Virus record (IMG/VR): IMGVR_UViG_3300021964_000012
Location: 62,001-126,000 of that record
DNA length: 64,000 nt
Strand: one strand, 5' to 3'
Shown here: positions 1,184-60,748 of the stretch, piece by piece
How the letters are laid out: every line of letters begins with the position of its first letter
Position numbering within the stretch: the first letter of the stretch is position 1
Translations under genes and position numbers: made by a program
The notes under the pieces: generated by a model
Databases searched by the model: none
What the model was told of the DNA's origin: nothing
The model's input: the letters and a program-made list of their open reading frames with translations, nothing else

Positions 1184-1257
1184 TGGCAGAGGACCAAGGA
1201 GTCGAACCCTGGCTTAGTGGGTTGGAGCCACTCGTGCTACCGTAACACTTGTCCTCT
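1184..1257 (-). tRNA. tRNA-Trp (CCA)
   Basis: Reverse complement AGAGGAC...GTCCTCT-G-CCA acceptor; anticodon loop CT-CCA-AC; T-loop GGTTCGACTCC; encoded CCA. Confidence 0.95.
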
Positions 1258-1263
1258 ATAATT

Positions 1264-1340
<77 letters not shown>

Positions 1341-41339: not shown

Positions 41340-42361
41340 TCGTTTTCTCCATTCCATAATCGATTAATTGCACCGAGGTTTTGTCCACCTCTAAGGCTTG
41401 TAAGTTTTCCAGGTTTACGTATTTCAAGCCAGCTTACACACCAATTTGTAAATTGGTTTTCGCCATCATAACTAGACACAATCTCATACCCAGTTGTTTT
41501 GCAGAACTCTTTAAGTGTGTAACCATTTGTGTAAGTGTAGTGCATTTCATCAACTTTGTCAATCGCTTTTGGAAAACTACAATTATTATAGGTAAAAACT
41601 ATTGCTCCACCTGGCTTTAAAAGGTCAAATGCACTCCTAATATACTTTTCTATTACATCTTGTGTCTTAAAATTAAACCAATTGAATGATACAATTAAAC
41701 CAAGTTGACTTTTTGGCAACATGTGCATGGGATTATCAGTAGTGTCGTCAAATTCATAATATCTTAGTCTCTTTTGATACAATTTACTCCATAGTTTTTT
41801 AGTTTCAATGAACCTGCCTTCAACATTATCTGCAAGGTACAAAGGATCAAGAGCAACAAGTTGTTTGGTATAATATCCTTTCAATGGTCCAATTTCTAAA
41901 CCAGGCCATTTGAAATCTACATATTTTTTTATAGTTCCAACAAATTGTTTTTCTATTTCTGATGGTTCTTCTCCTGAGATAGGTGGTGTAAAAAATAATT
42001 CGTGGTAATCAGCTTGAAAATTCTTGTGTTCTGGTGGTTGAACAAGATCCGCTTTCTGTATCTCAATGCTTTTTTCGTGATAGGTTTTTTCTAAATTTAA
42101 AATCATTTGGTCCAGTTCTAATATGAATCTATTTAGATAGGTGTATAGATCAGTGATATTTTTTAGAATTTCTCTTTGAGTATTGTGCATACTTTCTTTG
42201 AGATTATCAATTTCGATATTTTCTAAATTTACTGATGCATTGAAATTTTCTAATTCTTGAAAAATTGGTCTTTCAATTTTTTGATAATCAAGACTGTCTC
42301 TATTAGTAGATATAATACGATATAACGTATTGCGATAGTTTATTAGGTCTTTAAATTGCAT
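41336..42361 (-). CDS. class I SAM-dependent methyltransferase with N-terminal coiled coil
   Basis: GLEIGP motif I, LLKPGG, FTYN. Confidence 0.65.
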   Translation of the reverse strand: MQFKDLINYRNTLYRIISTNRDSLDYQKIERPIFQELENFNASVNLENIEIDNLKESMHNTQREILKNITDLYTYLNRFILELDQMILNLEKTYHEKSIEIQKADLVQPPEHKNFQADYHELFFTPPISGEEPSEIEKQFVGTIKKYVDFKWPGLEIGPLKGYYTKQLVALDPLYLADNVEGRFIETKKLWSKLYQKRLRYYEFDDTTDNPMHMLPKSQLGLIVSFNWFNFKTQDVIEKYIRSAFDLLKPGGAIVFTYNNCSFPKAIDKVDEMHYTYTNGYTLKEFCKTTGYEIVSSYDGENQFTNWCVSWLEIRKPGKLTSLRGGQNLGAINRLWNGENE

Positions 42362-45021
42362 TATTCAAACTCAAATAGTGTGTTAAATGTGTTGGTGGTA
42401 TCTGTTTCGCTTGCTAGATCCCAGTCAAGAACACCAAGCAAATTGCTTATTTTTTGATCCACAACTGTTGCTTCCATCAGGGCATTATCAAAAGGTAGTT
42501 CTTTGAACCATTGTGGCAAGTGCATCTCATCTGTTGGATAACCAATTGATGTCCAGTTAAGTGGATTGGATTTTAGTTTGCAAACAATAGTTTTCATTCC
42601 GTCTACAATACTTTGACTGTAGTTGTCTGAATTCATCTTCTTCATGTTATTCCAGTTAAGTGCAGCTCTAACATGTCCAGGCATGTTTGCACGACCTTCT
42701 TGTTCTTCACGTTTGCCATACATTGTGAGATTATTAACACGTTTAGGAGATCCTTTTTCCCAAGCAGGGCGTTCTTTGAAGTCAATCTTAAATGCTTTGA
42801 TCATGTCGATTATTTCCTGACGTTCAGCACCAGCAAGAACTCTTGTTAATAGTGTCATCAAGAAGTCCTGTATCACCTTAGGAGTATCACTGCGTTTCAA
42901 GTCCAAACCCATTGCTTTAATCTTACCTTGTTTTCCTGCAACATCAAGACGTTTACCTTCGTTGTCAAAGATATTAATTGCATAACGTTTCTTTGTGATG
43001 AACAAGCCTCTATCAGCAATACTTTCTCTACCACCTTTGATAATAAGTCCGTTTTCTCTTGGCACATGAAATGCCTGTTCCATAAATGCAGGCCAACTGT
43101 CGTTCAGTTGATCACTTATAGCATCATAAAGTTGTATACAAATTTCTTTGTTCCATTCCATGTTGCCTGCATCAATGTCTTTCTTAAGTATTGGATATGC
43201 ACTGAAATATACACTATCTGTATCACCATATATTACTGCATCACCAACATGATCATACTTTCCAGTGATTGCTTCATTAACAAATGCATCCATATGATAT
43301 GCAATACTTCTGCCAGTGAGTGTGGTTGATTGTCCTATGCGTTTGTCAAAGAATCTACAACCTGGATTGAGAATAGCACCATATAAACTGTTCAAGTTAA
43401 TCTTCTTAACCAACTGTCTCTTGTCCAAAAATTCTATTTCTGCTGGGTCAGTTGCTTGTCTAAGATTTGCTTGTATCTCTTGTCTCTCTCTATACCAACG
43501 TGCAAGTAAGCCAGGAACAATACCTTCTTTTTCATATGTAAAAATAGTACCATTTGCACTCAGCATCCAAGGTTGGTTGCTATCAAAGATCAGTTTCCAA
43601 ATCTCTGCGGCACTGTGTACACTTTCTTCGCCGTTTTCCCAGTCAATGGTAATCTCTGTGCCACGTTCTTGTTTCATAACCGCAGTGTATTCTAGTGTGC
43701 CAAACAATCCTTCCCACGCCATAGCAAATGAACTTTTGTTGTTCATCTTGTTCTTGATATAGTTGTCGGTCATTATAGGTCGCAGTTGTCCTACAATGGT
43801 TTCGCCGGCCATGTTCAGAGCTCTAATAGCACTTGGATACAAACTGTTGATGTCTATAGCACCTATCCATTCATGTATACCTTTTTTAGGATATGCAACA
43901 TATGCACCTGCCGCCGCAGTATCTTCATCAGTGAGCCTTTGACGTCTGTTTGGAACAACTAAGCCTTGTTCGTGTGCTTCGTTAATGATTGCTTGTTCTG
44001 TAACTGCTACTGCACCCATTGTTGTTTGTAGTAGCACAGTATTTGCATGTGCTAGTTCATTTGCAAGTGCTAGGAAACGCAGTTTCTTATCCAGTTTATC
44101 TAGCAGTGCAGTATCTTGTCTAGAATACTCTATAAACGTTTCAAAGTTCTGATTGTACAGTTGATCTAATGTGCCTTCATAAGCAGTTTTCTTCTCATCA
44201 AGTTCATGTTCGCCAATGGCATCCAAACTATAACTGTGACGCTCTTCGTATGTGTATTTTCTGTACAGTTGCATATAGTCCATATGTACTCTGCCAATGG
44301 TATCAAATGTGATATTCTCTGATCCAAAACGTTCAAATGTACGTTTCTTTGGCAGTTGACTCCATAGACAAAAACGTCTAGTGTCATCTTTGCTCAGTAT
44401 CCTTGCAGTTCTATTAACAAGATAAGGTATATCATAACCTTCACTGTTCCAACCACTGATTACATCAGCATCTTCAATTAGGTCTAAAAATGTTGTGAGC
44501 AAGTCTTCTTCACGTTCAAGCAATATTGTGTTCGGAAACTTACTGCATATCTCTTGAGCTGTCTCCCAGCTCAGTGTCTTGGGAGGAAGTACTAGTGTTA
44601 TTAATTGTTCCATCCATTGTAAGTATACACTTATAGCAGTGACTGGATTAAATGGATCGGCAACACTACTGTATCCTCGCACAGGATCAAAATCAGTTTC
44701 AATATCAAAAAAAGCAGTTTGCAATGTTGGTGCGTTTTGATCTTTGTAGTTCTCTTCAAAACATCTAAACACAGGATTGATATCAGATTCAAATATATCT
44801 TTACCTGATTGCATTCTAAGTTCCTTACGAAACTCTTTGTTGTTACGTGTTGAAAATCTACTTACAGGTTTACCATAGATACTTTTGTATTTGCCTCTAG
44901 GATCTGCATAATAGAAACAATACGATGCAGGATACTCACGGTACTCTCTTTTGCCATCTACACGTTCTACAACGTGTATGCGATCTTTTTCTCTGTCAAA
45001 TAGTGCATCAACATAGCTCAT
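42361..45021 (-). CDS. family B DNA polymerase
   Basis: FFDIET, GWNSEGYD, DINSLYPS, KINLNSLYG, YGDTDS, KKRY. Start refined to MSYVDA. Confidence 0.97.
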   Translation of the reverse strand: MSYVDALFDREKDRIHVVERVDGKREYREYPASYCFYYADPRGKYKSIYGKPVSRFSTRNNKEFRKELRMQSGKDIFESDINPVFRCFEENYKDQNAPTLQTAFFDIETDFDPVRGYSSVADPFNPVTAISVYLQWMEQLITLVLPPKTLSWETAQEICSKFPNTILLEREEDLLTTFLDLIEDADVISGWNSEGYDIPYLVNRTARILSKDDTRRFCLWSQLPKKRTFERFGSENITFDTIGRVHMDYMQLYRKYTYEERHSYSLDAIGEHELDEKKTAYEGTLDQLYNQNFETFIEYSRQDTALLDKLDKKLRFLALANELAHANTVLLQTTMGAVAVTEQAIINEAHEQGLVVPNRRQRLTDEDTAAAGAYVAYPKKGIHEWIGAIDINSLYPSAIRALNMAGETIVGQLRPIMTDNYIKNKMNNKSSFAMAWEGLFGTLEYTAVMKQERGTEITIDWENGEESVHSAAEIWKLIFDSNQPWMLSANGTIFTYEKEGIVPGLLARWYRERQEIQANLRQATDPAEIEFLDKRQLVKKINLNSLYGAILNPGCRFFDKRIGQSTTLTGRSIAYHMDAFVNEAITGKYDHVGDAVIYGDTDSVYFSAYPILKKDIDAGNMEWNKEICIQLYDAISDQLNDSWPAFMEQAFHVPRENGLIIKGGRESIADRGLFITKKRYAINIFDNEGKRLDVAGKQGKIKAMGLDLKRSDTPKVIQDFLMTLLTRVLAGAERQEIIDMIKAFKIDFKERPAWEKGSPKRVNNLTMYGKREEQEGRANMPGHVRAALNWNNMKKMNSDNYSQSIVDGMKTIVCKLKSNPLNWTSIGYPTDEMHLPQWFKELPFDNALMEATVVDQKISNLLGVLDWDLASETDTTNTFNTLFEFE

Positions 45022-45815
45022 TATTTGTTTAGTCCATTCGTACAGTAAGGTATTAGTATTTCTTGTGTCCAAGCAAGATCTCCATCAGGTGAAGGATGGA
45101 AGTCGTCATCAGATATAAGCATTCTTTTTACACAAAAACTATATATGTCTTGCATTGGGTCCATAATAGCAGTATAAGTCTCTTTGATTGAATCTGGTAA
45201 AAATTTTACAATATTAAAATTTTCACTGCGATTAGGAACAGATGGATCTAAAAAATCAACAAATATTGACCGATAACCACTAGCATCAAGATATTTTTTC
45301 AATTGTATTTTCCAAATTGCATTTTCAACCGCTCTTGATTCAAAACTCTTGTATTTGTGTATGTCTCGATAACCCCACCAATTTAATGTTATATCGCCTT
45401 CACGACTTGCACCTCCAGTTGATCCATGACACACATTATCTGTATAATTATAAACAAAATTTGCATTTTTGTCAACTGCGTCGGCTGAAAAAATTGCATC
45501 TTCACGATCATGTCCAGACCACATAACTACTACCATAGTCTGATCTGGTGATAATTTAGAGTTTTCTAATCCCCATACTATACTTTTTGAAATGAAATTA
45601 TTGCCAGCACCAGGCATAGCACAAGAATAGACTTCATTGAATCCTGCAAGATCTCTAAAGTAGTATGGCCAACTAACAGGAACTTGGGTAGGATTAGTGT
45701 AGGTAAAACTACATCCACCTACCACAAGATTTTCAAAACCAAGATCTATAACTTGATCAAATTGTTTTGATACTTTCTGTGTTTGCATAGACTGTATATG
45801 GATAACACGATCCAT
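45021..45815 (-). CDS. SGNH/GDSL-like hydrolase or acyltransferase
   Basis: GGCSFT, AMPGAGN, MWSGHDRED, DDFHPS. Confidence 0.7.
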   Translation of the reverse strand: MDRVIHIQSMQTQKVSKQFDQVIDLGFENLVVGGCSFTYTNPTQVPVSWPYYFRDLAGFNEVYSCAMPGAGNNFISKSIVWGLENSKLSPDQTMVVVMWSGHDREDAIFSADAVDKNANFVYNYTDNVCHGSTGGASREGDITLNWWGYRDIHKYKSFESRAVENAIWKIQLKKYLDASGYRSIFVDFLDPSVPNRSENFNIVKFLPDSIKETYTAIMDPMQDIYSFCVKRMLISDDDFHPSPDGDLAWTQEILIPYCTNGLNK

Positions 45816-45818
45816 ATA

Positions 45819-46076
45819 CTATAAAGTCCTGCCTGCAGTTGTAAGTAGCTCATCTAGTACTTCTTGGTCTTCTTTTTCAGCAGTGTAACTAGCCTTGTGG
45901 GCAATACGTATTGCTTTTTTAAGCACACTAGGCTTAATCTGTAGTTCTTCAGCAATGCTTTTTACTGTATCATTTAGTCCTTCGTTCAGTGCGTCTACTT
46001 CGCTCATTACACCCATACCTTCGTTGATAATCTGTGTAATTTTTGCTTTCTGTTCTGAGTCAAATTGGGTTGTCAT
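45819..46076 (-). CDS. T4 DsbA/GapR-like dsDNA-binding protein
   Basis: 85-aa helical protein, VKSIAEEL.IKPSVLKKAIRIAHK; upstream of the polymerase. Confidence 0.6.
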   Translation of the reverse strand: MTTQFDSEQKAKITQIINEGMGVMSEVDALNEGLNDTVKSIAEELQIKPSVLKKAIRIAHKASYTAEKEDQEVLDELLTTAGRTL

Positions 46077-46100: not shown

Positions 46101-46129
46101 ATTGTATACTAAACGTTGACGGATGTCAA
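46101..46129 (-). promoter_or_regulatory. sigma70-type promoter for the replication operon
   Basis: TTGACA-17 nt-TACAAT. Confidence 0.7.
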
Positions 46130-47261: not shown

Positions 47262-48329
47262 TTACTCCTTATACTCTACTTCTAAATTTTGTTCACCAAT
47301 CAAATTAAACTTATCGCCACACATCACACCACAACGTTCTAGTTTGCTTCCGTTTGTCCAACTACGTTTTATGTTATCAAACCAAGGTCCTTCTACTATT
47401 TCTTGTAGTTTTCCATGAAACACATTTGTGCGTGGTAAACCTCCACTCTGTTGCATTAGTTTTTTTATTAAAATTTGATCAGCGGTACCGTCAACTTCTG
47501 GACCATATAGTCTGTCATGTAGCCAACCACACGGAAATACAAAGCCGTCAGCACCAATGTAAATCTCTTTGATATTTAACGCATTACAACTTATACACGC
47601 AGTTTTTACGTATTCACCGATGCTACCAGTTGGAAGTTTGTCATAGTTACTGTTGCGGTACTTTGGATCGCTTGGTGGATATATAATATAGTCTACTAAA
47701 TTTTTTTTATTGTAAACTGTTACTTTACTTTCGTACTCGTGTTTGCGATTCAAGAACCTACCAGTACGTTTTGCACTGAACTTTTTAAAACCCATTTTCT
47801 TACTTAATCGTTCTGCAGCATCTACTTGATCTTGATTGTGATCAAAAACAATGTAATCCCAATATGCAACACCACCGCCTGCAATAAAAGTACTAGCATT
47901 ATCCATTACTTTATCCCATAGTACATTTCTACGATATATGTGATTTGTATCTTCTAGTCCGTCAATACCAAATGCAATAAAATCTACATAAGGTGCTACT
48001 TCTACGTATGTTTTATTCTTGCCTATCCCGCCATTGGTATGGATACCAATTTTAACCTCTGGCAAGATAGATTTTATATGTTGCACTATCTGCGTGATAT
48101 AATAGTTGCTAAACGGATCACCGTATGTACCGCAAAAATACACTTGCTCTAAACTTGTAAATTGTTCTAAAGGAATACTTTCCTTGAACTCTGTAAGTGT
48201 CCAGTTCTTCAATGGAAGTGTTGTTAGTGTTTTGCCGCCAAAAAAATTACGTGGACATTGTGGACATGCCGCATTACATAAGTTTGTAATTTCAAGTTGT
48301 AAACTCTTTACATCAGAAAGTTTTATCAT
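47262..48329 (-). CDS. radical SAM protein with C-terminal SPASM/Twitch-like domain
   Basis: CNAACPQC, GTYGDP, HTNG, IDG, YR, C...VFPCGW...CGVMCG. Confidence 0.85.
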   Translation of the reverse strand: MIKLSDVKSLQLEITNLCNAACPQCPRNFFGGKTLTTLPLKNWTLTEFKESIPLEQFTSLEQVYFCGTYGDPFSNYYITQIVQHIKSILPEVKIGIHTNGGIGKNKTYVEVAPYVDFIAFGIDGLEDTNHIYRRNVLWDKVMDNASTFIAGGGVAYWDYIVFDHNQDQVDAAERLSKKMGFKKFSAKRTGRFLNRKHEYESKVTVYNKKNLVDYIIYPPSDPKYRNSNYDKLPTGSIGEYVKTACISCNALNIKEIYIGADGFVFPCGWLHDRLYGPEVDGTADQILIKKLMQQSGGLPRTNVFHGKLQEIVEGPWFDNIKRSWTNGSKLERCGVMCGDKFNLIGEQNLEVEYKE

Positions 48330-48871
48330 CTTATTACAGCAATTTGTGTATAACGTTTATCGATACAGTCTTTTACGACATCTACAACTCTTTCAATGGG
48401 CATTCCGCCTGACCAATTGTTCATTTTACTGTTAAACTTACCTACCTCAAACGTTGAAACAACGTTACGTGCTTCGTGTACTATTTTTCTGTTATATAAT
48501 TTACCAAACTTACTTAGACAGTTTTTGCTTAGGTTGTAGAAGAATTTATTATCTTTGATGCCTGGATAACTGCTCCAGTAAGAGCCTGTACTTGAAAAGT
48601 TAATAATGTGTGCACCTTGTAATTTTTTATAAAATAAATCAGTGATATAAACCATACTTGTAAAGTTTACGGTCAATTGATCCCAAGCATCATCAACCTG
48701 TGGCCCAAGTGCAAAAGTGTTTATAACAACATCTGGCGTAAAATCCTTTACAATCCGTTTACATTCATAACGGCTACTGAAATCATACTCAGGCTTTCCA
48801 ACTACAACGGTATCTGGTAAGGCACTTTCTAATTTCTTTGCTATTGTGCTTTTTCCTAGTATTAGTATCAT
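48326..48871 (-). CDS. short SDR-like oxidoreductase
   Basis: LILG..TIA, VVIN, INFSS, YNLSK. Confidence 0.65.
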   Translation of the reverse strand: MILILGKSTIAKKLESALPDTVVVGKPEYDFSSRYECKRIVKDFTPDVVINTFALGPQVDDAWDQLTVNFTSMVYITDLFYKKLQGAHIINFSSTGSYWSSYPGIKDNKFFYNLSKNCLSKFGKLYNRKIVHEARNVVSTFEVGKFNSKMNNWSGGMPIERVVDVVKDCIDKRYTQIAVIR

Positions 48872-49938
48872 GATAGCTCTGCAATAACTTTATTTGCACT
48901 TTGTTCGTTTGCTTTTTTACAAAGGTTGCCAAAGTCTTCGCTGATGATATATTCACGATTATGTTCGCTCGATTCCTTTGTATAATGCAATAATTCATCA
49001 ATGGTATAAATGTTTATAGTTTTACAAAGCTCAACAATTTTTTCAAGTCGACTTAGGTTACCAGGATCACGATCAAAGGACAAGTCTAAAGGACCGTAAT
49101 CAAACATAAAGCCAAGTTGTTGCAATTGATTGTACACATCAAATTGACTAACAGGAATAAAAGCAGTTTCTCCTAATAAACATTTTAGTGTCTTTTCACT
49201 AAGGTGTGGCCCTGCCCTAGTGTATTTTCCATAATCATCTATCATGTAACTGTAGTGATAGCTCTCTAAACAGAAATGCAGTGCCGCATCTGTTAATGCT
49301 ATGCTAAATGGATTACTGTTATATCTTTGTTTGTTGATAGAAAAATTATCAAGTAAAATTGTATTACCTTCGTACTTTTGTCTAAAAATTTCAGTCAGTT
49401 CATCTAGTATAGGATAACCAGTTTCCTGATACCAGTTTACATTCTTTGGTTCAATCCAATTGTTTAGTTTTACAAGACTGTTATCTTCAATTAATTCCAT
49501 AATAGCAGTAAAAATAATTAATTTGCTTTGGGTGACTCTATTATTAATAGCACTCACTTTATACTTTTGTTGCTTCTCTGGCATCGTAGGAAAAAGTTCA
49601 TTTATTTGTTGTAATTGATAGTGCCAACTATGAAAGGTATAAAAGTCTACATTTGGTAGTTGATCAAAATTATCGTAAGGCAGACCATCATTGATTATAA
49701 TTATACGACCGTCGATGTTTTTTGCTTGCTCTCTAATCCATTCCCAATGGAATCGTTCCATATGATAAGACAGTATGTAATTATCATAACCTTTAGGCAA
49801 ATCAGGATCAAATCCTCGCAACCATAAGCCAAAGAAGTTATTGCCCGGAAGATCATGCAACCAATCTAGTTCATTCCATGCTAACCTATCAGGAAGAGTG
49901 CCAAAAATTCGAGGTGGTGCAAGATCGTCGTTAATCAT
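48868..49938 (-). CDS. exostosin/GT10-like putative glycosyltransferase (TEKT family)
   Basis: NNR, LES, LSEKTLK, LGF.F....SFD. Confidence 0.5.
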   Translation of the reverse strand: MINDDLAPPRIFGTLPDRLAWNELDWLHDLPGNNFFGLWLRGFDPDLPKGYDNYILSYHMERFHWEWIREQAKNIDGRIIIINDGLPYDNFDQLPNVDFYTFHSWHYQLQQINELFPTMPEKQQKYKVSAINNRVTQSKLIIFTAIMELIEDNSLVKLNNWIEPKNVNWYQETGYPILDELTEIFRQKYEGNTILLDNFSINKQRYNSNPFSIALTDAALHFCLESYHYSYMIDDYGKYTRAGPHLSEKTLKCLLGETAFIPVSQFDVYNQLQQLGFMFDYGPLDLSFDRDPGNLSRLEKIVELCKTINIYTIDELLHYTKESSEHNREYIISEDFGNLCKKANEQSANKVIAELS

Positions 49939-49943
49939 ATTGA

Positions 49944-49950
49944 TACTTAT
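49944..49950 (-). promoter_or_regulatory. putative late promoter ATAAGTA
   Basis: 5 nt upstream of the ATG at 49938; no SD. Confidence 0.45.
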
Positions 49951-49962
49951 GGAACGTTATTA

Positions 49963-50057
49963 TGGCACTTTAAAAACCGGGGTAGCGATATCTCGGTTCT
50001 AGGGCAGGTCCCTCCCTAGCCTTTTGGATCGGTCCTAAGGCTATCCTATGCAAGTGC
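49963..50057 (-). ncRNA. candidate multi-hairpin structured RNA
   Basis: Three adjacent stems (49975-49998, 49999-50019, 50017-50043) closable by GCACTT/AAGTGC. Confidence 0.45.
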
Positions 50058-50148
50058 TTAAAAACTGTAGCATTTGACTGTTACGTGCCACATAAGGCAA
50101 CGACAGTACAGTAAGTATGCCCAACACATACCACATTGCATAAATCAT
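50041..50148 (-). CDS. 35-aa membrane peptide
   Basis: MIYAMWYVLGILTVLSLPYVARNSQMLQFLSTCIG; ATGA overlap with the upstream stop. Confidence 0.5.
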   Translation of the reverse strand: MIYAMWYVLGILTVLSLPYVARNSQMLQFLSTCIG

Positions 50149-50906
50149 TGTTGATACTCCATTGTAACATGCCATGCTGTTCCATCACGAAATTCATCTC
50201 TAGAAAACTGACTGTGAGCAATATGTTCTAGCATTTCTTGCCTATCAAAGTTGGTTTTATTTTGCCACAGTTGCACTGCACTTTCTCCTAGTATTTCTAC
50301 AGGCTTGCCCAAGCAAAGAGCTTCCACTGCCGCCATACTATGATGCGTAATAACTTTTTTAGATTTTCGTATCAACGGCAAAATATCTTTGTACCTTTGT
50401 TGTCTACTTGCTCTTCCGACTGGTTTGTCTCTAACCAAACAGTATATATCCAAATTATGATAGTGTTCTAAAGTTTCTTGTCTCCAGGTTTCATAATCTT
50501 TGCCAAACCAGGAGAACAACTTGTTTGGTAAAGGCATTACCAATAGATTATAATCACCATCTGTATTCCAATCTTCGTATCTATCATCTAGTTCAAGTGT
50601 GTGTATTCTACTTTTACCAAACTGACCTAGCCTTGTGTTCTGCAGACTGTTACGACTAATACGATAGTACCATGGTTTTTTATAGTTGTGATTGCCAATA
50701 TAGCCATTGTCGATATAAAAAAAGTCTAAATTGTATTTGCGTATTGATTCTTGCAGGTATATTTCAAATGGGGCACTAGTAATTAGAACACGATCAGGAT
50801 CAATGTCATCAGCACTGCTGACGATTTTACAATCATAATTTTTGATTAGATACGGAAAAAGTTGCTCACGTATGCGTAAAGATTCACTTGGTATCTGTAT
50901 TTTCAT
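50145..50906 (-). CDS. capsular-polysaccharide-type (KpsS/KpsC-like) GT-B protein
   Basis: YIDNGY, VRDKP, ITHHSMAAVEALCLGKPV. Confidence 0.55.
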   Translation of the reverse strand: MKIQIPSESLRIREQLFPYLIKNYDCKIVSSADDIDPDRVLITSAPFEIYLQESIRKYNLDFFYIDNGYIGNHNYKKPWYYRISRNSLQNTRLGQFGKSRIHTLELDDRYEDWNTDGDYNLLVMPLPNKLFSWFGKDYETWRQETLEHYHNLDIYCLVRDKPVGRASRQQRYKDILPLIRKSKKVITHHSMAAVEALCLGKPVEILGESAVQLWQNKTNFDRQEMLEHIAHSQFSRDEFRDGTAWHVTMEYQQ

Positions 50907-51612
50907 TATCTATGTGTTGTATGTGTTGTTCAAGGTTTCGTGTTAACGATAGAGTCTTCATAGCATTTTGTTCAATATACTCTGGATGTATTCGAACAAT
51001 ACTGGGTTTGATGTGTTGTATGTCTGTGAATTCAGTTGTATGTAGCATGTGATCAGCTGGTCTATAACCATGCATTCTTGTTTGTCCAACTAGATGAAGA
51101 GCTGCGTGCGGTTTAACAATATACCCATAGCCGCCCATTGAATAGAGTCCTTGACTATGAACAAACTTTCCATGATCTTCTCTGTCATGTAGACTCCATA
51201 TTTCCTCTTCTACATATTCTTGTTCTTTAATATGCATATTATACATTTTACTGTATGGATTAAGATAGTCTAATTTTAGAATATCTGTGAATCTATCCAT
51301 AATATCTTCAGGGAGTGGTCGTAGCATATAAGCATCATGTTCTAAAATCATAAAAGGTTCATCTGCCTCTACACATTCACACCAAAGAAAATAATGACTC
51401 AAAAAACATCCAAGTACACCAAGTCTTCCACCTTTCATTTTAAACTTGTACTGTCTTAGTCCAAGCTCTTCAAGGATTGCCGGAGCATCAGCACCATGTA
51501 CTGCTGAAAAAATTTCTGGACTGATGCCAACCTCTTTAGCTCTTTTAATACATTTTTGTCCCATAGTGGCACTATGTTTATTTGATTCTAAAACAATAAT
51601 CTTAGTTTTCAT
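50884..51612 (-). CDS. GT25-family glycosyltransferase
   Basis: FSAVHG, GCFLSHY.LW, ILEHDA, GYIVKP.AA, PAD. Confidence 0.8.
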   Translation of the reverse strand: MKTKIIVLESNKHSATMGQKCIKRAKEVGISPEIFSAVHGADAPAILEELGLRQYKFKMKGGRLGVLGCFLSHYFLWCECVEADEPFMILEHDAYMLRPLPEDIMDRFTDILKLDYLNPYSKMYNMHIKEQEYVEEEIWSLHDREDHGKFVHSQGLYSMGGYGYIVKPHAALHLVGQTRMHGYRPADHMLHTTEFTDIQHIKPSIVRIHPEYIEQNAMKTLSLTRNLEQHIQHIDNENTDTK

Positions 51613-57851: not shown

Positions 57852-58134
57852 TTTCTTTTACTATACGAAAGGTTGAATTATCAACGATCTCAGCTGATCC
57901 GTAACTACATCTTAGTTTTCTTGTTTTAAATTCACCACCATGATTTTCAATGCGTACAGTGTATTCACCTGGTTCTGCTGAAATTTGCAGTATTTCTGTC
58001 ACGTATTCGATCGGATACCAAGTGTAGTTGCGTTCATTGAACAGTTCATCGTTGACGTAGATTCTATACATCGGTGGTTTGTTTTGCCATTTAGCAAAAA
58101 CATCTAGTTCCATTTTAACAAATTGTTTTTCCAT
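57838..58134 (-). CDS. hypothetical beta-sandwich protein
   Basis: PMYRIYVNDELFNER.Y.W...PGEY.VRIE. Confidence 0.65.
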   Translation of the reverse strand: MEKQFVKMELDVFAKWQNKPPMYRIYVNDELFNERNYTWYPIEYVTEILQISAEPGEYTVRIENHGGEFKTRKLRCSYGSAEIVDNSTFRIVKENASL

Positions 58135-60728
58135 TATAGAACCGCTATCTCTGTTGCAGTGTAATCAGGTGTAAATTGACTGTTAATCTGGAAAAAATAC
58201 TGTGCCTGTTTCATTATCTCATCTCTTGCTTCATCTCTATTGGCGGCTTTTATTGTTCCATCATAGGTTTGATATCTACTATCCCCGGTGTAAGGTATTC
58301 TATATGAAAACTTTTTTAAGTCTGCCTTGTCTGGTTCAGGAAGATCAATCTCTACTTTTAGTGTGTTGAAATCTGGTGTATCAGTTTTCTTCTGTGGATG
58401 CTCAAACACGTTTAAGGCATCTTGTATTGCTGCCTGCGTGGCAGTTTGAGCACTGGATGCGTTTACCTTACGTTCCATTGTTTTTTCTGTACCATCTGCT
58501 GTAGTGTACTGCATAGTATACTTCCACGGCTTTACTGGGCCACCAAGATCCTTTTGCAACTGCTTTGCTTTTGCCAAACGTTTATCATCCGGCCGGCCAT
58601 CAAGTTTGTTTAGTATTGCTTGATTCTGTTTTTGTTGTACAACAAGATTGGCCCAACGCTTTTTAAATACTTCTTTGTTGATATCACCTGATTGAAAGTC
58701 AGCAAACAGACTGTCAATTGTGCGAGCACTGCTTTCGCTTTTGCTCAGTGTTTTGTACAGTTTCTTTTGATACTCTTGTCTGTATGCTTGTGGATCAGCG
58801 GCTATGGTCATTGCTCTTGCAAATCTCAACATAGTATCCATTACTTCATCTACTTCTTGAGCAGTGTACTGTCCGCCTGGTCCTCTAAACTCAATGTAAC
58901 CGTCCTTGATATGTATACTGGTGTATTTTGCTTGTCCAGTACCAGCACGCACATATTCTTCAGCTGCATCTTCCAAGTTGTCTTTCATTTTCTGCATTGC
59001 TTGTGCGGCTTTTTCAGGTGGTAACTGAGCTGCACGAGCTTCCAACTGTCCTAATGCACTGGCTGCATAGTTGTTACTGAGACGCCCGTACTTGCCAAGA
59101 ATGTACTTGTCACCTGAGAATAGCACAAGTTTTGTATAGTCAATGTCGTTGCCCTGTGGTACACTTATATTCATGTGTAGGCCAGTGCTTTGATTTGTAT
59201 AGATGTCTCCATCTTTATCTTCAATATAAGCAAATAGTTTTTCCAGTTGATCAAGTGCTTCATCAAGAGGCATTACCGGTGATACCAGTTCCCAACCAGC
59301 ATCAGGCCCTTCGTCAGCAGTCAAACTGCTGTCTGGTTCAAGAGTATACTTGCCTTCTTCTTTATCACTGCCATGGTACTGATCACTAACGTTTGTGCCT
59401 TTGCCGGTTATCTCACTTATGTCCTGAGCCCAGGAGTCTATTGATATTCCACCACCGCCTTCGGTAAAGTATGGCCACACTAGGTCGTACTTGTTGAGCA
59501 GATCACTCATGGCTTCAATGCCTTCGTGTTCCCAAAACTGATTCCATGTTACACTACCATGTATTTCTTCTTGTACTTCTTCTTGGACTTCTGTCCAGAT
59601 GTTGCCTTGCTCTTCAACTTCCTGGTTCAAGAAGTCTTCTTGTTCATCTTCGTCCATTGATTCAAAGTTTTCATCGCCTTTTAACTTATCTCGTACCAAG
59701 GTGTATTCTTCGTCCATCATTTTTTCTGCTACGAGCATTGATTCGTATTCCATAAGGTCGTCGATGACTACCTCACGAAATCGTTCAGCTTCAATTGGTT
59801 GTAGATTAAGCCATGCATCTTCGTAGCCATAAAACGTACTAATATCATCCAACGTGCCAATTGGCTCATCATAGTCCATGTCTGCTTCATCACCATATTC
59901 ATCTGTTTCACGTTGTGTGTCTACAAATATAAGTTCTAATTCAAATCCTGCACGCACACCTTGAGCTAGTTCACTTTTTGCCCAACTGCGTAATGCACTG
60001 CTTGACATATCTACTTCAAGTAAGTCTTCTTCTTTGATTGCTTGATAACGTTCCATTAGGCTTTCGGCTAATGTTTTTTTCTTACGTTTTTTACCTGGCT
60101 TGGTTTTGTTCACCAGATCCATATTGAGATTCAAGCCAAGTTTTTCTATGTTGCGTTGGTCCTCACCTGGACGTACATCCACAGTGAGTGCAGTTTTGAA
60201 TCTTGGATCGTTTGCTTGTGCGGCAGTTGGAATGTAACCAGATGCTTCGTTTACTTTTTTCTTCTTGCCTGCACAGTGAGCTTTTTGTGAAAAGCCTTTT
60301 GGATTTGAACAGTCAATACTGTCCTTGTATTTTTGACTCCAACCTTCTTCAACTTGCTCTTTTACTTCGTCTGAATATTCAATATCTTCTGCTCCAACTA
60401 TAACTGCTGGTAAGGTTTCTAAGCCTGCTTTACGAGCCGCATGCATTCTATGATGTCCGTCTAAGACTTGATAGCCTTTTGGATCTTTGCGTACCACAAT
60501 TGGCTTTCCTCCCCAAGTGCCAGTTTTCATCTTGAGTGCCATTTTTAGCACAGAATTTTTGTGATGTATGTCATCCATCTTACTAGACGGTTCATAGCCA
60601 AACAGACTCTTCACTGGCACAGGTTTGCTAGGACGTTGCTGATAACTGTCAGGTACATCTGCACCAAAGTACGCAGGATCTGTGTACAGTGTGATTAATT
60701 CTCGATTTTCAAACCAGGTTGCTTTCAT
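58134..60728 (-). CDS. multidomain protein: ParB-like domain, small basic modules and putative amidoligase (COOH-NH2 ligase type 2)
   Basis: VLDGHHR; GWSQKYKDSIDCSNPKGFSQKAHC; GFELE, EPDSSL, ELVSP, TGLHMNIS, KYTSI, IEFRGPGG. Confidence 0.75.
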   Translation of the reverse strand: MKATWFENRELITLYTDPAYFGADVPDSYQQRPSKPVPVKSLFGYEPSSKMDDIHHKNSVLKMALKMKTGTWGGKPIVVRKDPKGYQVLDGHHRMHAARKAGLETLPAVIVGAEDIEYSDEVKEQVEEGWSQKYKDSIDCSNPKGFSQKAHCAGKKKKVNEASGYIPTAAQANDPRFKTALTVDVRPGEDQRNIEKLGLNLNMDLVNKTKPGKKRKKKTLAESLMERYQAIKEEDLLEVDMSSSALRSWAKSELAQGVRAGFELELIFVDTQRETDEYGDEADMDYDEPIGTLDDISTFYGYEDAWLNLQPIEAERFREVVIDDLMEYESMLVAEKMMDEEYTLVRDKLKGDENFESMDEDEQEDFLNQEVEEQGNIWTEVQEEVQEEIHGSVTWNQFWEHEGIEAMSDLLNKYDLVWPYFTEGGGGISIDSWAQDISEITGKGTNVSDQYHGSDKEEGKYTLEPDSSLTADEGPDAGWELVSPVMPLDEALDQLEKLFAYIEDKDGDIYTNQSTGLHMNISVPQGNDIDYTKLVLFSGDKYILGKYGRLSNNYAASALGQLEARAAQLPPEKAAQAMQKMKDNLEDAAEEYVRAGTGQAKYTSIHIKDGYIEFRGPGGQYTAQEVDEVMDTMLRFARAMTIAADPQAYRQEYQKKLYKTLSKSESSARTIDSLFADFQSGDINKEVFKKRWANLVVQQKQNQAILNKLDGRPDDKRLAKAKQLQKDLGGPVKPWKYTMQYTTADGTEKTMERKVNASSAQTATQAAIQDALNVFEHPQKKTDTPDFNTLKVEIDLPEPDKADLKKFSYRIPYTGDSRYQTYDGTIKAANRDEARDEIMKQAQYFFQINSQFTPDYTATEIAVL

Positions 60729-60748
60729 AACAACGTATTTATCGCAAG

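What the first reader, a model, noticed from the sequence alone, without database searches (positions are those of the whole stretch)
49963..50090. Compact multi-stem RNA starting at a stop codon inside the glycan cluster
Seen: a GC-richer island with three back-to-back stems: TAGCCTT/AAGGCTA with inner GGA/TCC (50017-50043), CTAGGG/CCCTAG (49999-50019) and AACCG/CGGTT (49975-49998). The 3' segment can pair either with 50052-50057 (four-way junction) or with 50085-50090 (alternative), and the last stem is followed by a U run. This is more structure than a terminator needs. Inference: an ncRNA, ribozyme-like element or switch.
Basis: seen in the sequence. Interest (0 to 1): 0.6.

Follow-up and report, generated by a model that had tools for sequence, protein, structure and literature searches.

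The report
Conserved pseudoknot RNA of jumbo phages
The three stems are real and belong to one copy of an uncatalogued, strongly conserved, roughly 85-base pseudoknotted RNA that hundreds of giant bacteriophages carry at the end of a transcription unit; what it does is still unknown.

Summary
The stems exist at the stated coordinates. The RNA reads on the minus strand, the same sense as every gene nearby, and spans 50044-49963. Folding energy of this one sequence is no better than shuffles. The evidence is comparative. At least 206 distinct homologues in IMG/VR phage contigs keep three hairpins and a pseudoknot between the H2 loop and the 3' tail. In 103 of them 96.5% of cells pair, 10 of 12 pairs show compensatory changes, and 0 of 500 shuffles match. 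Two loop motifs, CCUUAGGACCG and AUUCGCUAC, are nearly invariant.

Its TAG stop is the start of the RNA.

There is one copy in this 328-kb genome. Rfam 15 has no match, and none of the 119 prokaryote pattern matches examined carried the other motifs. One cultured phage carries it: Pseudomonas phage PA5oct, where a classic terminator follows it.

The element always ends a gene. Its neighbours are a new promoter, a U-tract or a terminator.

My best reading is a folded 3'-terminal RNA domain recognised through its invariant loops, which sets or protects the transcript's 3' end. That function is inferred. A ribozyme, a trans-acting RNA and other roles remain open.

The parts
49963..50044 (-). Whole RNA element: three hairpins plus a 3' tail. 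It is the only copy in the 328-kb genome.
   Evidence: Covariance model R1 scores 104.4 bits (E 1e-24) at G000:111963-112044(-), which is window 49963-50044. The next hit scores 14 bits. The core is about 90% identical in loci whose flanking protein is only 76-87% identical.
50041..50148 (-). Unannotated 35-codon ORF (MIYAMWYVLGIL...STCIG; hydrophobic N-terminus). Its ATG overlaps the TGA of the 253-aa gene (ATGA). Its TAG stop (50043-50041) forms the first bases of the RNA.
Evidence: Open frame. It is conserved in L012, L023 and L024, with many differences that I read as synonymous third-position changes.
50018..50042 (-). Hairpin H1. It presents the near-invariant motif CCUUAGGACCG (50040-50030).
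   Evidence: Pairs 3-35, 4-34, 5-31, 6-30, 7-29, 8-28, 10-25, 11-24 and 12-23 of alignment A1 are 93% paired, and 3 pairs show compensatory changes. The motif is exact in 61 of 63 family members found without anchoring on it. Its GAC part is mostly unpaired in predicted folds.
50001..50017 (-). Hairpin H2: stem AGGG/CCCU and loop 50013-50005. Loop bases 50011-50006 form the 5' strand of the pseudoknot.
   Evidence: In the window's clade the stem is 96.8% paired, with 2 compensatory pairs. In the main family all four stem pairs covary, e.g. pair 56-67 is GC 60 / CG 42.
49973..50000 (-). Hairpin H3: stem 50000-49994 with 49979-49973, which uses four bases of the U run. The 14-nt loop 49993-49980 carries the conserved AUAUCGCUAC.
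   Evidence: 98.8% paired in A1. ACCA/UGGU, ACCG/CGGU and AUCA/UGGU variants occur. More distant relatives have wholly different stems around the same loop: AACAUUAA/UUAGUGUU and UACUUUA/UAAAGUA. The loop-closing pairs covary in 103 sequences.
49963..49971 (-). 3' tail AAAGUGCCA. Bases 49969-49964 form the 3' strand of the pseudoknot with the H2 loop. In this window that gives 4 Watson-Crick pairs and 2 central mismatches.
   Evidence: The tail is invariant in the clade. Across the family the H2 loop and the tail covary: CCCAC/GUGGG, CCCUC/GAGGG, UCCCCC/GGGGGA, GCUACU/AGUAGU, GCCGAU/AUCGGC, UGGUGA/UCACCA. The helix is 96.3% paired, with 4 compensatory pairs.
49943..49951 (-). CATAAGTAT, a T4-late-promoter-like motif 4 nt before the ATG (49938) of the 356-aa gene, which has no Shine-Dalgarno sequence. 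It marks the start of the next transcription unit.
   Evidence: Most genes in the window have an AGGAG-type ribosome site. Only this gene and the ParB-like gene (start 60728) have the (C/G)ATAA(A/G)TA(C/T) motif within 4-6 nt of the ATG. The same motif follows the element in about 18% of family members.

Best explanation
Shown: window 50044-49963, read on the minus strand, is one member of a large, uncurated family of 80-115-nt structured RNAs of jumbo phages. These phages have a T4-type DNA polymerase and are related to PA5oct, Atu_ph07 and the Rak2/GAP32-like group. The RNA begins at the stop codon of whatever gene lies upstream. It folds into H1, which displays CCUUAGGACCG; H2, whose loop pairs with the 3' tail to make an H-type pseudoknot; and H3, a freely varying stem displaying (A/U)U(A/U)UCGCUAC.

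Inferred: it is the 3'-terminal domain of the upstream transcription unit. I propose it is a compact folded end-piece that a conserved partner, most likely a protein, recognises through the two invariant loops. It would set and/or protect the 3' end of the transcript and may survive as a stable small RNA. It is not a leader for the next gene, because that gene brings its own promoter.
For: Real, RNA-level and sense-strand:
- In 24 clade sequences, 95.8% of cells pair, 6 pairs are compensatory and 0 of 500 shuffles match.
- In 103 main-family sequences, 96.5% pair, 10 of 12 pairs are compensatory (178 cells) and 0 of 500 shuffles match. Slid controls pair at 45% or less.
- G.U cells favour the gene strand.

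Conserved loops were tested by rotating the search anchors.

End-of-unit position:
- An ORF ends at or just before H1 in nearly all loci, yet the upstream genes fall into more than 30 unrelated families.
- Downstream lies a sigma70-like promoter in 27% of 206 distinct members, typically serving a DsbA-like gene followed by DNA polymerase. A late-type ATAAATA motif follows in about 18%.
- A U-tract starts within 3 nt of the pseudoknot's 3' strand in 14% of 169 contexts, against 0.65% at random positions.
- In PA5oct a canonical terminator (8-bp stem plus U5) directly follows the tail.
- Sequence conservation stops exactly at the tail.

One strong copy per genome in 6 of 6 large genomes.

Contigs from two marine metatranscriptome runs span a relative's element. 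They have the highest depth reported on the 5-kb stretch laid.
Against: - No transcript ends, strand or abundance are known. The RNA-library evidence is contigs only, could be DNA carry-over, and shows contigs running through the element on both sides.
- Such sequence-specific loops are more than an exonuclease block needs.
- No partner protein is identified.
- About half of family members show none of the downstream signals I scanned for.
- The window's own pseudoknot is weak, with 4 pairs and 2 mismatches.
- Most cultured relatives lack the RNA, so it is dispensable for this phage group.
Confidence: 0.45

Rival explanations
1. Trans-acting small RNA. It would be a decoy or sponge for a host or phage protein, or a base-pairing RNA that uses the invariant loops as seeds. 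It would be made from the 3' end of the upstream mRNA or from its own promoter.
For: There are about 20 invariant, mostly single-stranded loop nucleotides across hundreds of phages. There is a single copy, independent of the identity of neighbouring genes. In PA5oct it lies far from the dsbA/polymerase locus. The element plus a terminator in PA5oct looks like a 3'-UTR-derived small RNA. H1 carries an A-GGA motif; from my own knowledge this resembles CsrA/Rsm sites.
Against: No conserved promoter lies upstream. The element abuts a stop codon. No target or partner is identified, and there is only one GGA site. This reading overlaps the best explanation, since a stable 3' fragment could act in trans.
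Confidence: 0.2
2. A new self-cleaving ribozyme, or a site for a specific RNase, that cuts polycistronic transcripts between units.
For: The fold is compact and pseudoknotted, with many invariant unpaired nucleotides. It lies between same-strand genes in phage genomes, as many hammerhead, twister, pistol and hatchet copies do (my own knowledge). Its topology, with a hairpin loop paired to a segment 3' of a second hairpin, recalls pistol.
Against: No known ribozyme family matches, even at E up to 10 on the 701-bp stretch around the element; searches at E up to 1 on nine related loci also found none. The P2 helix that encloses the pistol core is absent. No cleavage data exist. RNA-library contigs run through the element uncut, which is weak evidence.
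Confidence: 0.12
3. A DNA-level element: a PeSL-like terminator/promoter cassette that serves as a recombination anchor at the edge of a hypervariable gene island, or an origin-related site next to the replication genes.
For: It sits at the border of a gene-content-variable region, with more than 30 upstream gene families. An early-type promoter often follows it. It is frequently just upstream of dsbA-like plus DNA polymerase. PeSLs are composite terminator/promoter motifs that mediate module swapping in T4-like phages (PMC4122927, PMC2839356).
Against: There are one or two copies per genome, not many. Covariation tolerates G.U on one strand only. The long-range pseudoknot covaries. These are RNA-level constraints. 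Acting as a homology patch would be a by-product of conservation.
Confidence: 0.06
4. An ordinary intrinsic terminator (H3 plus the U run) with incidental upstream hairpins.
For: UUUUU follows the ACCG/CGGU base of H3 in the window. The element ends a transcription unit.
Against: H3 has a 14-nt conserved loop and an A/U- and G.U-rich stem, and the terminator scan does not call it. The U run pairs with upstream AG(A/G)A. The main family has no U run after H3. The tail beyond the U run is invariant and covaries with the H2 loop. PA5oct adds a separate, real terminator after the element.
Confidence: 0.05
5. A riboswitch or other cis-regulatory leader controlling the downstream gene.
For: The architecture is aptamer-like, with a pseudoknot and conserved loops. 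In some members a U-tract follows the 3' strand of the pseudoknot.
Against: Downstream genes are unrelated to one another, and a promoter usually separates them from the element. Here the 356-aa gene has its own late-type motif 4 nt from its ATG. No alternative-pairing expression platform is conserved. No riboswitch family matches.
Confidence: 0.04

Closest known systems
Pistol self-cleaving ribozyme (Rfam RF02679; PMC4604425)
   Same: It is small. A hairpin loop forms a roughly 6-bp pseudoknot with a segment lying 3' of a second hairpin, next to an A-rich linker. It is common in phage-derived sequence.
   Different: Covariance-model searches give no match. The P2 helix that closes the pistol core is absent. 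An extra hairpin H1 carries its own invariant motif. The conserved nucleotides differ. No cleavage is shown.
PeSL (promoter-early stem-loop) cassettes of T4-like phages (PMC2839356, PMC4122927)
   Same: It is a conserved non-coding block at the borders of hyperplastic gene regions. It is terminator-like RNA structure followed by an early sigma70-type promoter, and it is flanked by swapped genes.
   Different: PeSLs are short, simple and multi-copy within a genome. This element has one copy (rarely two) and three hairpins with a covarying pseudoknot and invariant loops. Only 27% of members have a sigma70-like promoter downstream.
H-type pseudoknots at RNA ends, e.g. the TYMV tRNA-like 3' structure and the T4 gene 32 mRNA pseudoknot (my own knowledge)
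   Same: A hairpin loop pairs with a downstream single strand, and an A-rich linker runs beside stem 1. In the window's clade the conserved block ends ...GCCA.
   Different: A whole hairpin (H3) is inserted in loop 3. The main family ends ...GAGCA, not CCA. Neither the tRNA model nor ARAGORN finds anything. Its position is the 3' end of varied genes, not the leader of gene 32.
Candidate structured RNAs mined from IMG/VR (8,495 'DNAVirus_N' csRNAs; PMC10690425)
   Same: Same data source and same kind of object: a covarying intergenic phage RNA, about 65 nt on average, that is often terminator-associated.
   Different: I could not check whether this family is among them, because the supplements are not held. 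The paper's text does not describe a jumbo-phage pseudoknot RNA of this kind.
3'-UTR-derived small RNAs of bacteria, and RNase III-processed 3' hairpins of T7 early mRNAs (my own knowledge)
   Same: Both are structured modules at mRNA 3' ends that stabilise the message and/or persist as small RNAs. The PA5oct copy is followed by a terminator, as type II 3'-UTR small RNAs are.
   Different: No processing or expression data exist. The conserved fold is much more elaborate, and there is a single site per genome.

Membership tests
Any Rfam 15 family (4227 models) | Covariance-model match at or near the gathering score | tested here: not met
   The window search at gathering threshold finds only two tRNAs, at 1187-1340. 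The 49700-50400 search at E up to 10 finds only a spurious TarA hit inside the 356-aa gene. Nine loci of the wider family show no hit on the element.
Rho-independent terminator | GC-rich stem with a short loop, directly followed by a U-tract that is not itself paired | tested here: not met
   The scan calls none on the minus strand. The H3 loop is 14 nt. The U run pairs with AG(A/G)A. Most of the family has no U run after H3.
Rho-independent terminator | Sequence downstream of the U-tract is unconstrained | tested here: not met
   The tail AAGUGCC(A) beyond the U run is invariant in the clade, and its counterpart covaries with the H2 loop across the family.
H-type pseudoknot | A hairpin loop pairs with a downstream strand, supported by compensatory changes | tested here: met
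   Helix 59-64 with 110-116 of A3 is 96.3% paired, and 4 pairs change on both sides. Seven different loop/tail pairings are seen. PA5oct has GCUGU/GCAGC.
PeSL cassette | Many copies per genome within hyperplastic regions | tested here: not met
   There is 1 copy in G000 and 1 strong hit in each of 5 other large genomes; only G003's second hit, at 36.5 bits, looks like a real copy, while G005's is a 13-bit match (E 0.34).
PeSL cassette | Stem-loop immediately followed by an early sigma70-type promoter | tested here: inconclusive
   This holds for 27% of 206 members. It does not hold in this window, where the strong sigma70-like promoter (46129-46101) lies 3.9 kb downstream, in front of the DsbA-like gene.
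Riboswitch / cis-regulatory leader | Lies in the 5' UTR of a consistent set of regulated genes, with an expression platform | tested here: not met
   Downstream genes fall into many unrelated families, and a promoter usually intervenes.
Pistol ribozyme | P1-P2-P3 with the pseudoknot and its conserved nucleotides; self-cleavage at G-U | tested here: not met
   No covariance-model hit, and no helix encloses H3 plus the pseudoknot strand. Cleavage itself cannot be tested with these tools.
tRNA / tRNA-like structure / tmRNA | Cloverleaf or acceptor-T mimic ending in CCA | tested here: not met
   ARAGORN finds none. The tRNA model gives no hit at E up to 10. The ...GCCA end is limited to the window's clade; the main family ends ...GAGCA.
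3'-UTR-derived or free-standing small RNA | A discrete, abundant transcript with defined 5' and 3' ends | not testable with these tools
   Only assembled contigs of RNA libraries were available, and they show presence but not ends or strand.

The most novel reading that the evidence does not exclude
The family is a new functional RNA class. One possibility is a self-cleaving or self-terminating RNA that ends transcription units without a classical hairpin-plus-U terminator, with the pseudoknot acting on RNA polymerase as it forms. Another is a dedicated protein-capturing RNA that jumbo phages use against a host factor. In either case a cultured model, PA5oct on Pseudomonas aeruginosa, is already at hand.
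Probability: 0.2. Interest if true: 0.85.

Novelty: new variant of a known kind. Interest (0 to 1): 0.62.

Why it matters
Jumbo phages are poorly understood, and almost nothing is known about how they punctuate their transcripts. This RNA has at least 206 distinct sequences, multi-helix covariation including a pseudoknot, and about 20 invariant loop bases. It is virus-specific as far as tested.

Conservation of that kind has, in other cases, pointed to ribozymes, riboswitches or dedicated protein-binding RNAs. The family is absent from Rfam 15.

The unannotated copy in PA5oct makes the question directly testable at the bench. The element also marks the border of a gene-swapping island that here holds glycan-modification genes, so it is a useful landmark for annotating these genomes.

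Tried and rejected
- Rfam at gathering and permissive thresholds, on the window and on nine related loci: nothing on the element.
- ARAGORN: nothing.
- blastn of the region, and of two family members, against 50,697 cultured-phage records: no true hit.
- Model R2 on Phosso, SCTP-2, Atu_ph07, Vibrio 2.275.O, GAP32, CBB, Yen9-04, 121Q and BF: only chance-level hits. The Atu_ph07 and SCTP-2 candidates lack the motifs.
- Thermodynamic significance of single sequences: none.
- The four-way-junction idea: rejected, because the partners are coding sequence.
- The plus-strand reading: in the window's own sequence the plus strand folds better (-28.2 against -21.3 kcal/mol) and has a GCGA-looped 10-bp hairpin, but the comparative data favour the minus strand.
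- The four PA5oct ncRNAs reported from RNA-seq lie elsewhere.
- Literature searches by topic and by motif string found no description. The supplements of the IMG/VR csRNA catalogue are not held.
- Resemblances I noticed and do not rely on: H1 to part of the 23S sarcin-ricin loop, the H2 loop as antisense of the 16S 530 loop, and A-GGA as a CsrA site. None was tested.

Full report
CONTEXT. The window is bases 62001-126000 of a 328,292-bp virus record with direct terminal repeats, judged complete. Nearly all long ORFs lie on the minus strand and are tightly packed. The genome has a T4-type DNA polymerase at 42361-45072 (phrog_262). The nearest cultured relatives by polymerase are Sinorhizobium phage Phosso, Agrobacterium phage Atu_ph07, Vibrio phage 2.275.O and the GAP32/CBB/121Q group, at 42-50% identity.

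The finding lies in the 206-nt gap (49939-50144) between a 253-aa gene (50145-50906) and a 356-aa gene (48868-49938). The neighbourhood includes a GT25 glycosyltransferase and a radical-SAM protein.

OBSERVATION. The three stems and the GC-richer island are there. Taken alone they are not remarkable. The 82-nt core folds no better than dinucleotide shuffles, with z -0.36 on the minus strand and -1.12 on the plus strand. The whole spacer gives -1.13 and -1.78. Rfam has nothing and neither does ARAGORN.

HOMOLOGUES AND STRAND. Relatives of the two flanking proteins in IMG/VR showed that only spacer positions 98-187 are conserved; these are window 49958-50047. They are about 90% identical even where the flanking protein is 76-87% identical. 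A 17-base pattern from H3 found 33 further distinct contexts.

An alignment of 24 sequences (A1) gives three hairpins with RNAalifold. Of the cells, 95.8% pair, 6 of 20 pairs change on both sides, and no shuffle of 500 reaches these values. Slid controls pair at 68% or less.

In this clade H3 includes the U run, which pairs with AG(A/G)A through G.U to A-U exchanges. Many G.U cells exist, for example 17 of 24 at pair 54-79, and they would be C.A on the other strand. Pairing is 95.8% on the gene strand against 88.9% on the complement. So the RNA is read on the minus strand, although the window's own plus strand folds more stably.

A MUCH LARGER FAMILY. Model R1 found more distant copies upstream of DsbA-like genes. 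Their H3 stems are completely different (AACAUUAA/UUAGUGUU, UACUUUA/UAAAGUA) around the same loop.

I then searched IMG/VR with pairs of motifs, rotating the anchors so that each motif was tested while unconstrained:
- H1 plus the H3 loop.
- The H2 loop plus the H3 loop.

With H1 and the tail left free, 61 of 63 true members still carry exact UAGGACC and the tail. In all I hold 206 distinct members, 170 of the main family and 36 of the window's clade, from contigs with 40-65% GC and up to 364 kb.

The consensus, 5' to 3', is:
- an A-rich leader, (U)AAGAAC;
- H1, of variable build, carrying CCUUAGGACCG;
- H2, a 4-6-bp stem with a 7-nt loop, usually GGCUGCU;
- H3, a variable stem (sometimes two-part) with a 9-nt loop AUUCGCUAC closed by covarying pairs;
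- AAA;
- the tail GUGAGCA.

THE PSEUDOKNOT. The H2 loop pairs with the tail. Lineages with other loops have matching tails: CCCAC/GUGGG, CCCUC/GAGGG, UCCCCC/GGGGGA, UCCCC/GGGGA, GCUACU/AGUAGU, GCCGAU/AUCGGC and UGGUGA/UCACCA.

I counted the H2 stem, the pseudoknot and the H3 closing pairs on 103 sequences (A3). Of the cells, 96.5% pair, 10 of 12 pairs show compensatory changes (178 cells), and 0 of 500 shuffles match. Slid controls pair at 45% or less.

In the window the pseudoknot pairs 50011-50006 with 49969-49964. That gives four Watson-Crick pairs and two central mismatches. Most clade members have five pairs.

WHAT THE REST OF THE SPACER IS. They belong to a 35-codon ORF (50148-50041) whose ATG overlaps the TGA of the 253-aa gene. 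The ORF is conserved in four lineages, with many differences that I read as synonymous third-position changes. Its TAG stop is the UAG at the foot of H1.

In most relatives the stop codon of a larger upstream gene occupies that same position. "Starting at a stop codon" is therefore right, and it is a family trait.

GENOMIC GRAMMAR.
- Upstream genes belong to more than 30 unrelated families. The commonest downstream gene, in 23 loci, is an 85-aa DsbA-like protein (phrog_12534/phrog_639) with a strong sigma70-like promoter, followed by DNA polymerase.
- Cultured relatives keep the dsbA-polymerase pair.
- In this window four genes, the 356-aa gene through the 375-aa gene, sit between the element and that promoter (46129-46101).
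- The 356-aa gene has CATAAGTAT 4 nt before its ATG and no Shine-Dalgarno sequence. That is a T4-late-promoter-like arrangement seen at only one other gene in the window.
- Across the family, a sigma70-like promoter follows the tail in 27% of members, a late-type ATAAATA motif in about 18% and a canonical terminator in about 2%.
- A U-tract starts within 3 nt of the tail in 14% of contexts, against 0.65% at random positions.
- Conservation stops exactly at the tail.

The element therefore closes a transcription unit rather than leading one.

DISTRIBUTION.
- There is one copy in this genome.
- Each of five other 262-364-kb IMG/VR genomes has one strong hit. One of them also has a second copy without H1, just upstream of dsbA-polymerase.
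- Among ten cultured relatives searched with model R2, only Pseudomonas phage PA5oct has it. The copy is at MK797984.1 115463-115560, scoring 31.8 bits (E 5e-6; E-values from this model are rough).
- The PA5oct copy starts at the stop of EST35_0189. It has CCCUUAGGACCG, GAUUCGCUAC and a GCUGU/GCAGC pseudoknot. An 8-bp hairpin plus U5 terminator follows directly, and then gene 0190.
- It is not one of PA5oct's four reported ncRNAs.

EXPRESSION. Three marine or estuarine metatranscriptome runs hold parts of the stretch. Contigs of two of them cover a relative's element, together with its upstream gene and about 166 nt downstream. Their depths of 8.2 and 5.7 are the highest reported on the 5-kb stretch laid. 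These are contigs: they carry no strand, no ends, and do not exclude DNA carry-over.

INTERPRETATION. Shown: a conserved, sense-strand, pseudoknotted RNA with two invariant displayed loops, positioned at the 3' end of a transcription unit.

Inferred, in my order of preference:
- About 0.45: a 3'-terminal domain that sets or protects the transcript end and is recognised by a partner through its loops.
- About 0.2: a trans-acting RNA.
- About 0.12: a new ribozyme or processing site.
- About 0.06: a DNA-level cassette of the PeSL type (PMC4122927).
- About 0.05: a plain terminator.
- About 0.04: a riboswitch.

The degree of loop conservation keeps the more novel readings alive.

NOVELTY. There is no Rfam 15 match and no paper found by topic or by motif string. 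The family may be one of 8,495 unnamed IMG/VR candidates in PMC10690425, whose supplements I could not read.

I rate it a new RNA family of a known general kind, the structured phage RNA with an H-type pseudoknot. Its function is unknown.

Noticed in passing
window 50041-50148 (-): Unannotated 35-codon ORF with a hydrophobic N-terminus. It is translationally coupled (ATGA) to the 253-aa gene and conserved in four lineages with a codon-like substitution pattern. It is probably a small membrane peptide.
   Followed up: partly
window 49943-49951 (-) and about 60734-60742 (-): (C/G)ATAA(A/G)TA(C/T) lies 4-6 nt before the ATG of two genes that lack a Shine-Dalgarno sequence: the 356-aa gene and the 864-aa ParB-like gene. 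This looks like T4-late-type promoters giving nearly leaderless mRNAs. The same arrangement is frequent downstream of the RNA in other phages.
   Followed up: partly
MK797984.1 (PA5oct) 115463-115560, locus L607:1501-1598: Unannotated copy of the RNA in a cultured, RNA-seq-studied jumbo phage. It lies between EST35_0189 and 0190 and is followed by a canonical terminator.
   Followed up: partly
L615:1501-1580 (G003:76939-77018): A second, divergent copy in one 353-kb phage genome. It keeps H2, H3 and the tail but lacks the H1 motif, and it sits about 540 nt upstream of dsbA-like plus DNA polymerase. The full copy lies 190 kb away.
   Followed up: partly
L203:2864-3435: A phage contig that carries the RNA also encodes a permuted (two-piece) tmRNA (112.6 bits) and a tRNA.
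   Followed up: no
window 1187-1340 (-): Two tRNA genes (65.9 and 50 bits).
   Followed up: no
window 46101-46129 (-) and 45819-46076 (-): Near-consensus sigma70 promoter (TTGACA-17-TACAAT, 11 of 12 matches) in front of an 85-aa DsbA-like gene. This gene-plus-polymerase pair is conserved from PA5oct to Atu_ph07. In many relatives the RNA lies directly upstream of this promoter; here four genes have been inserted between them.
   Followed up: partly
window 47262-48329 (-), 50884-51612 (-), 58134-60728 (-): A radical-SAM protein, a GT25 glycosyltransferase and an 864-aa protein with a ParB-like N-terminal domain. Most other proteins of the cluster have no Pfam or PHROG match.
   Followed up: no
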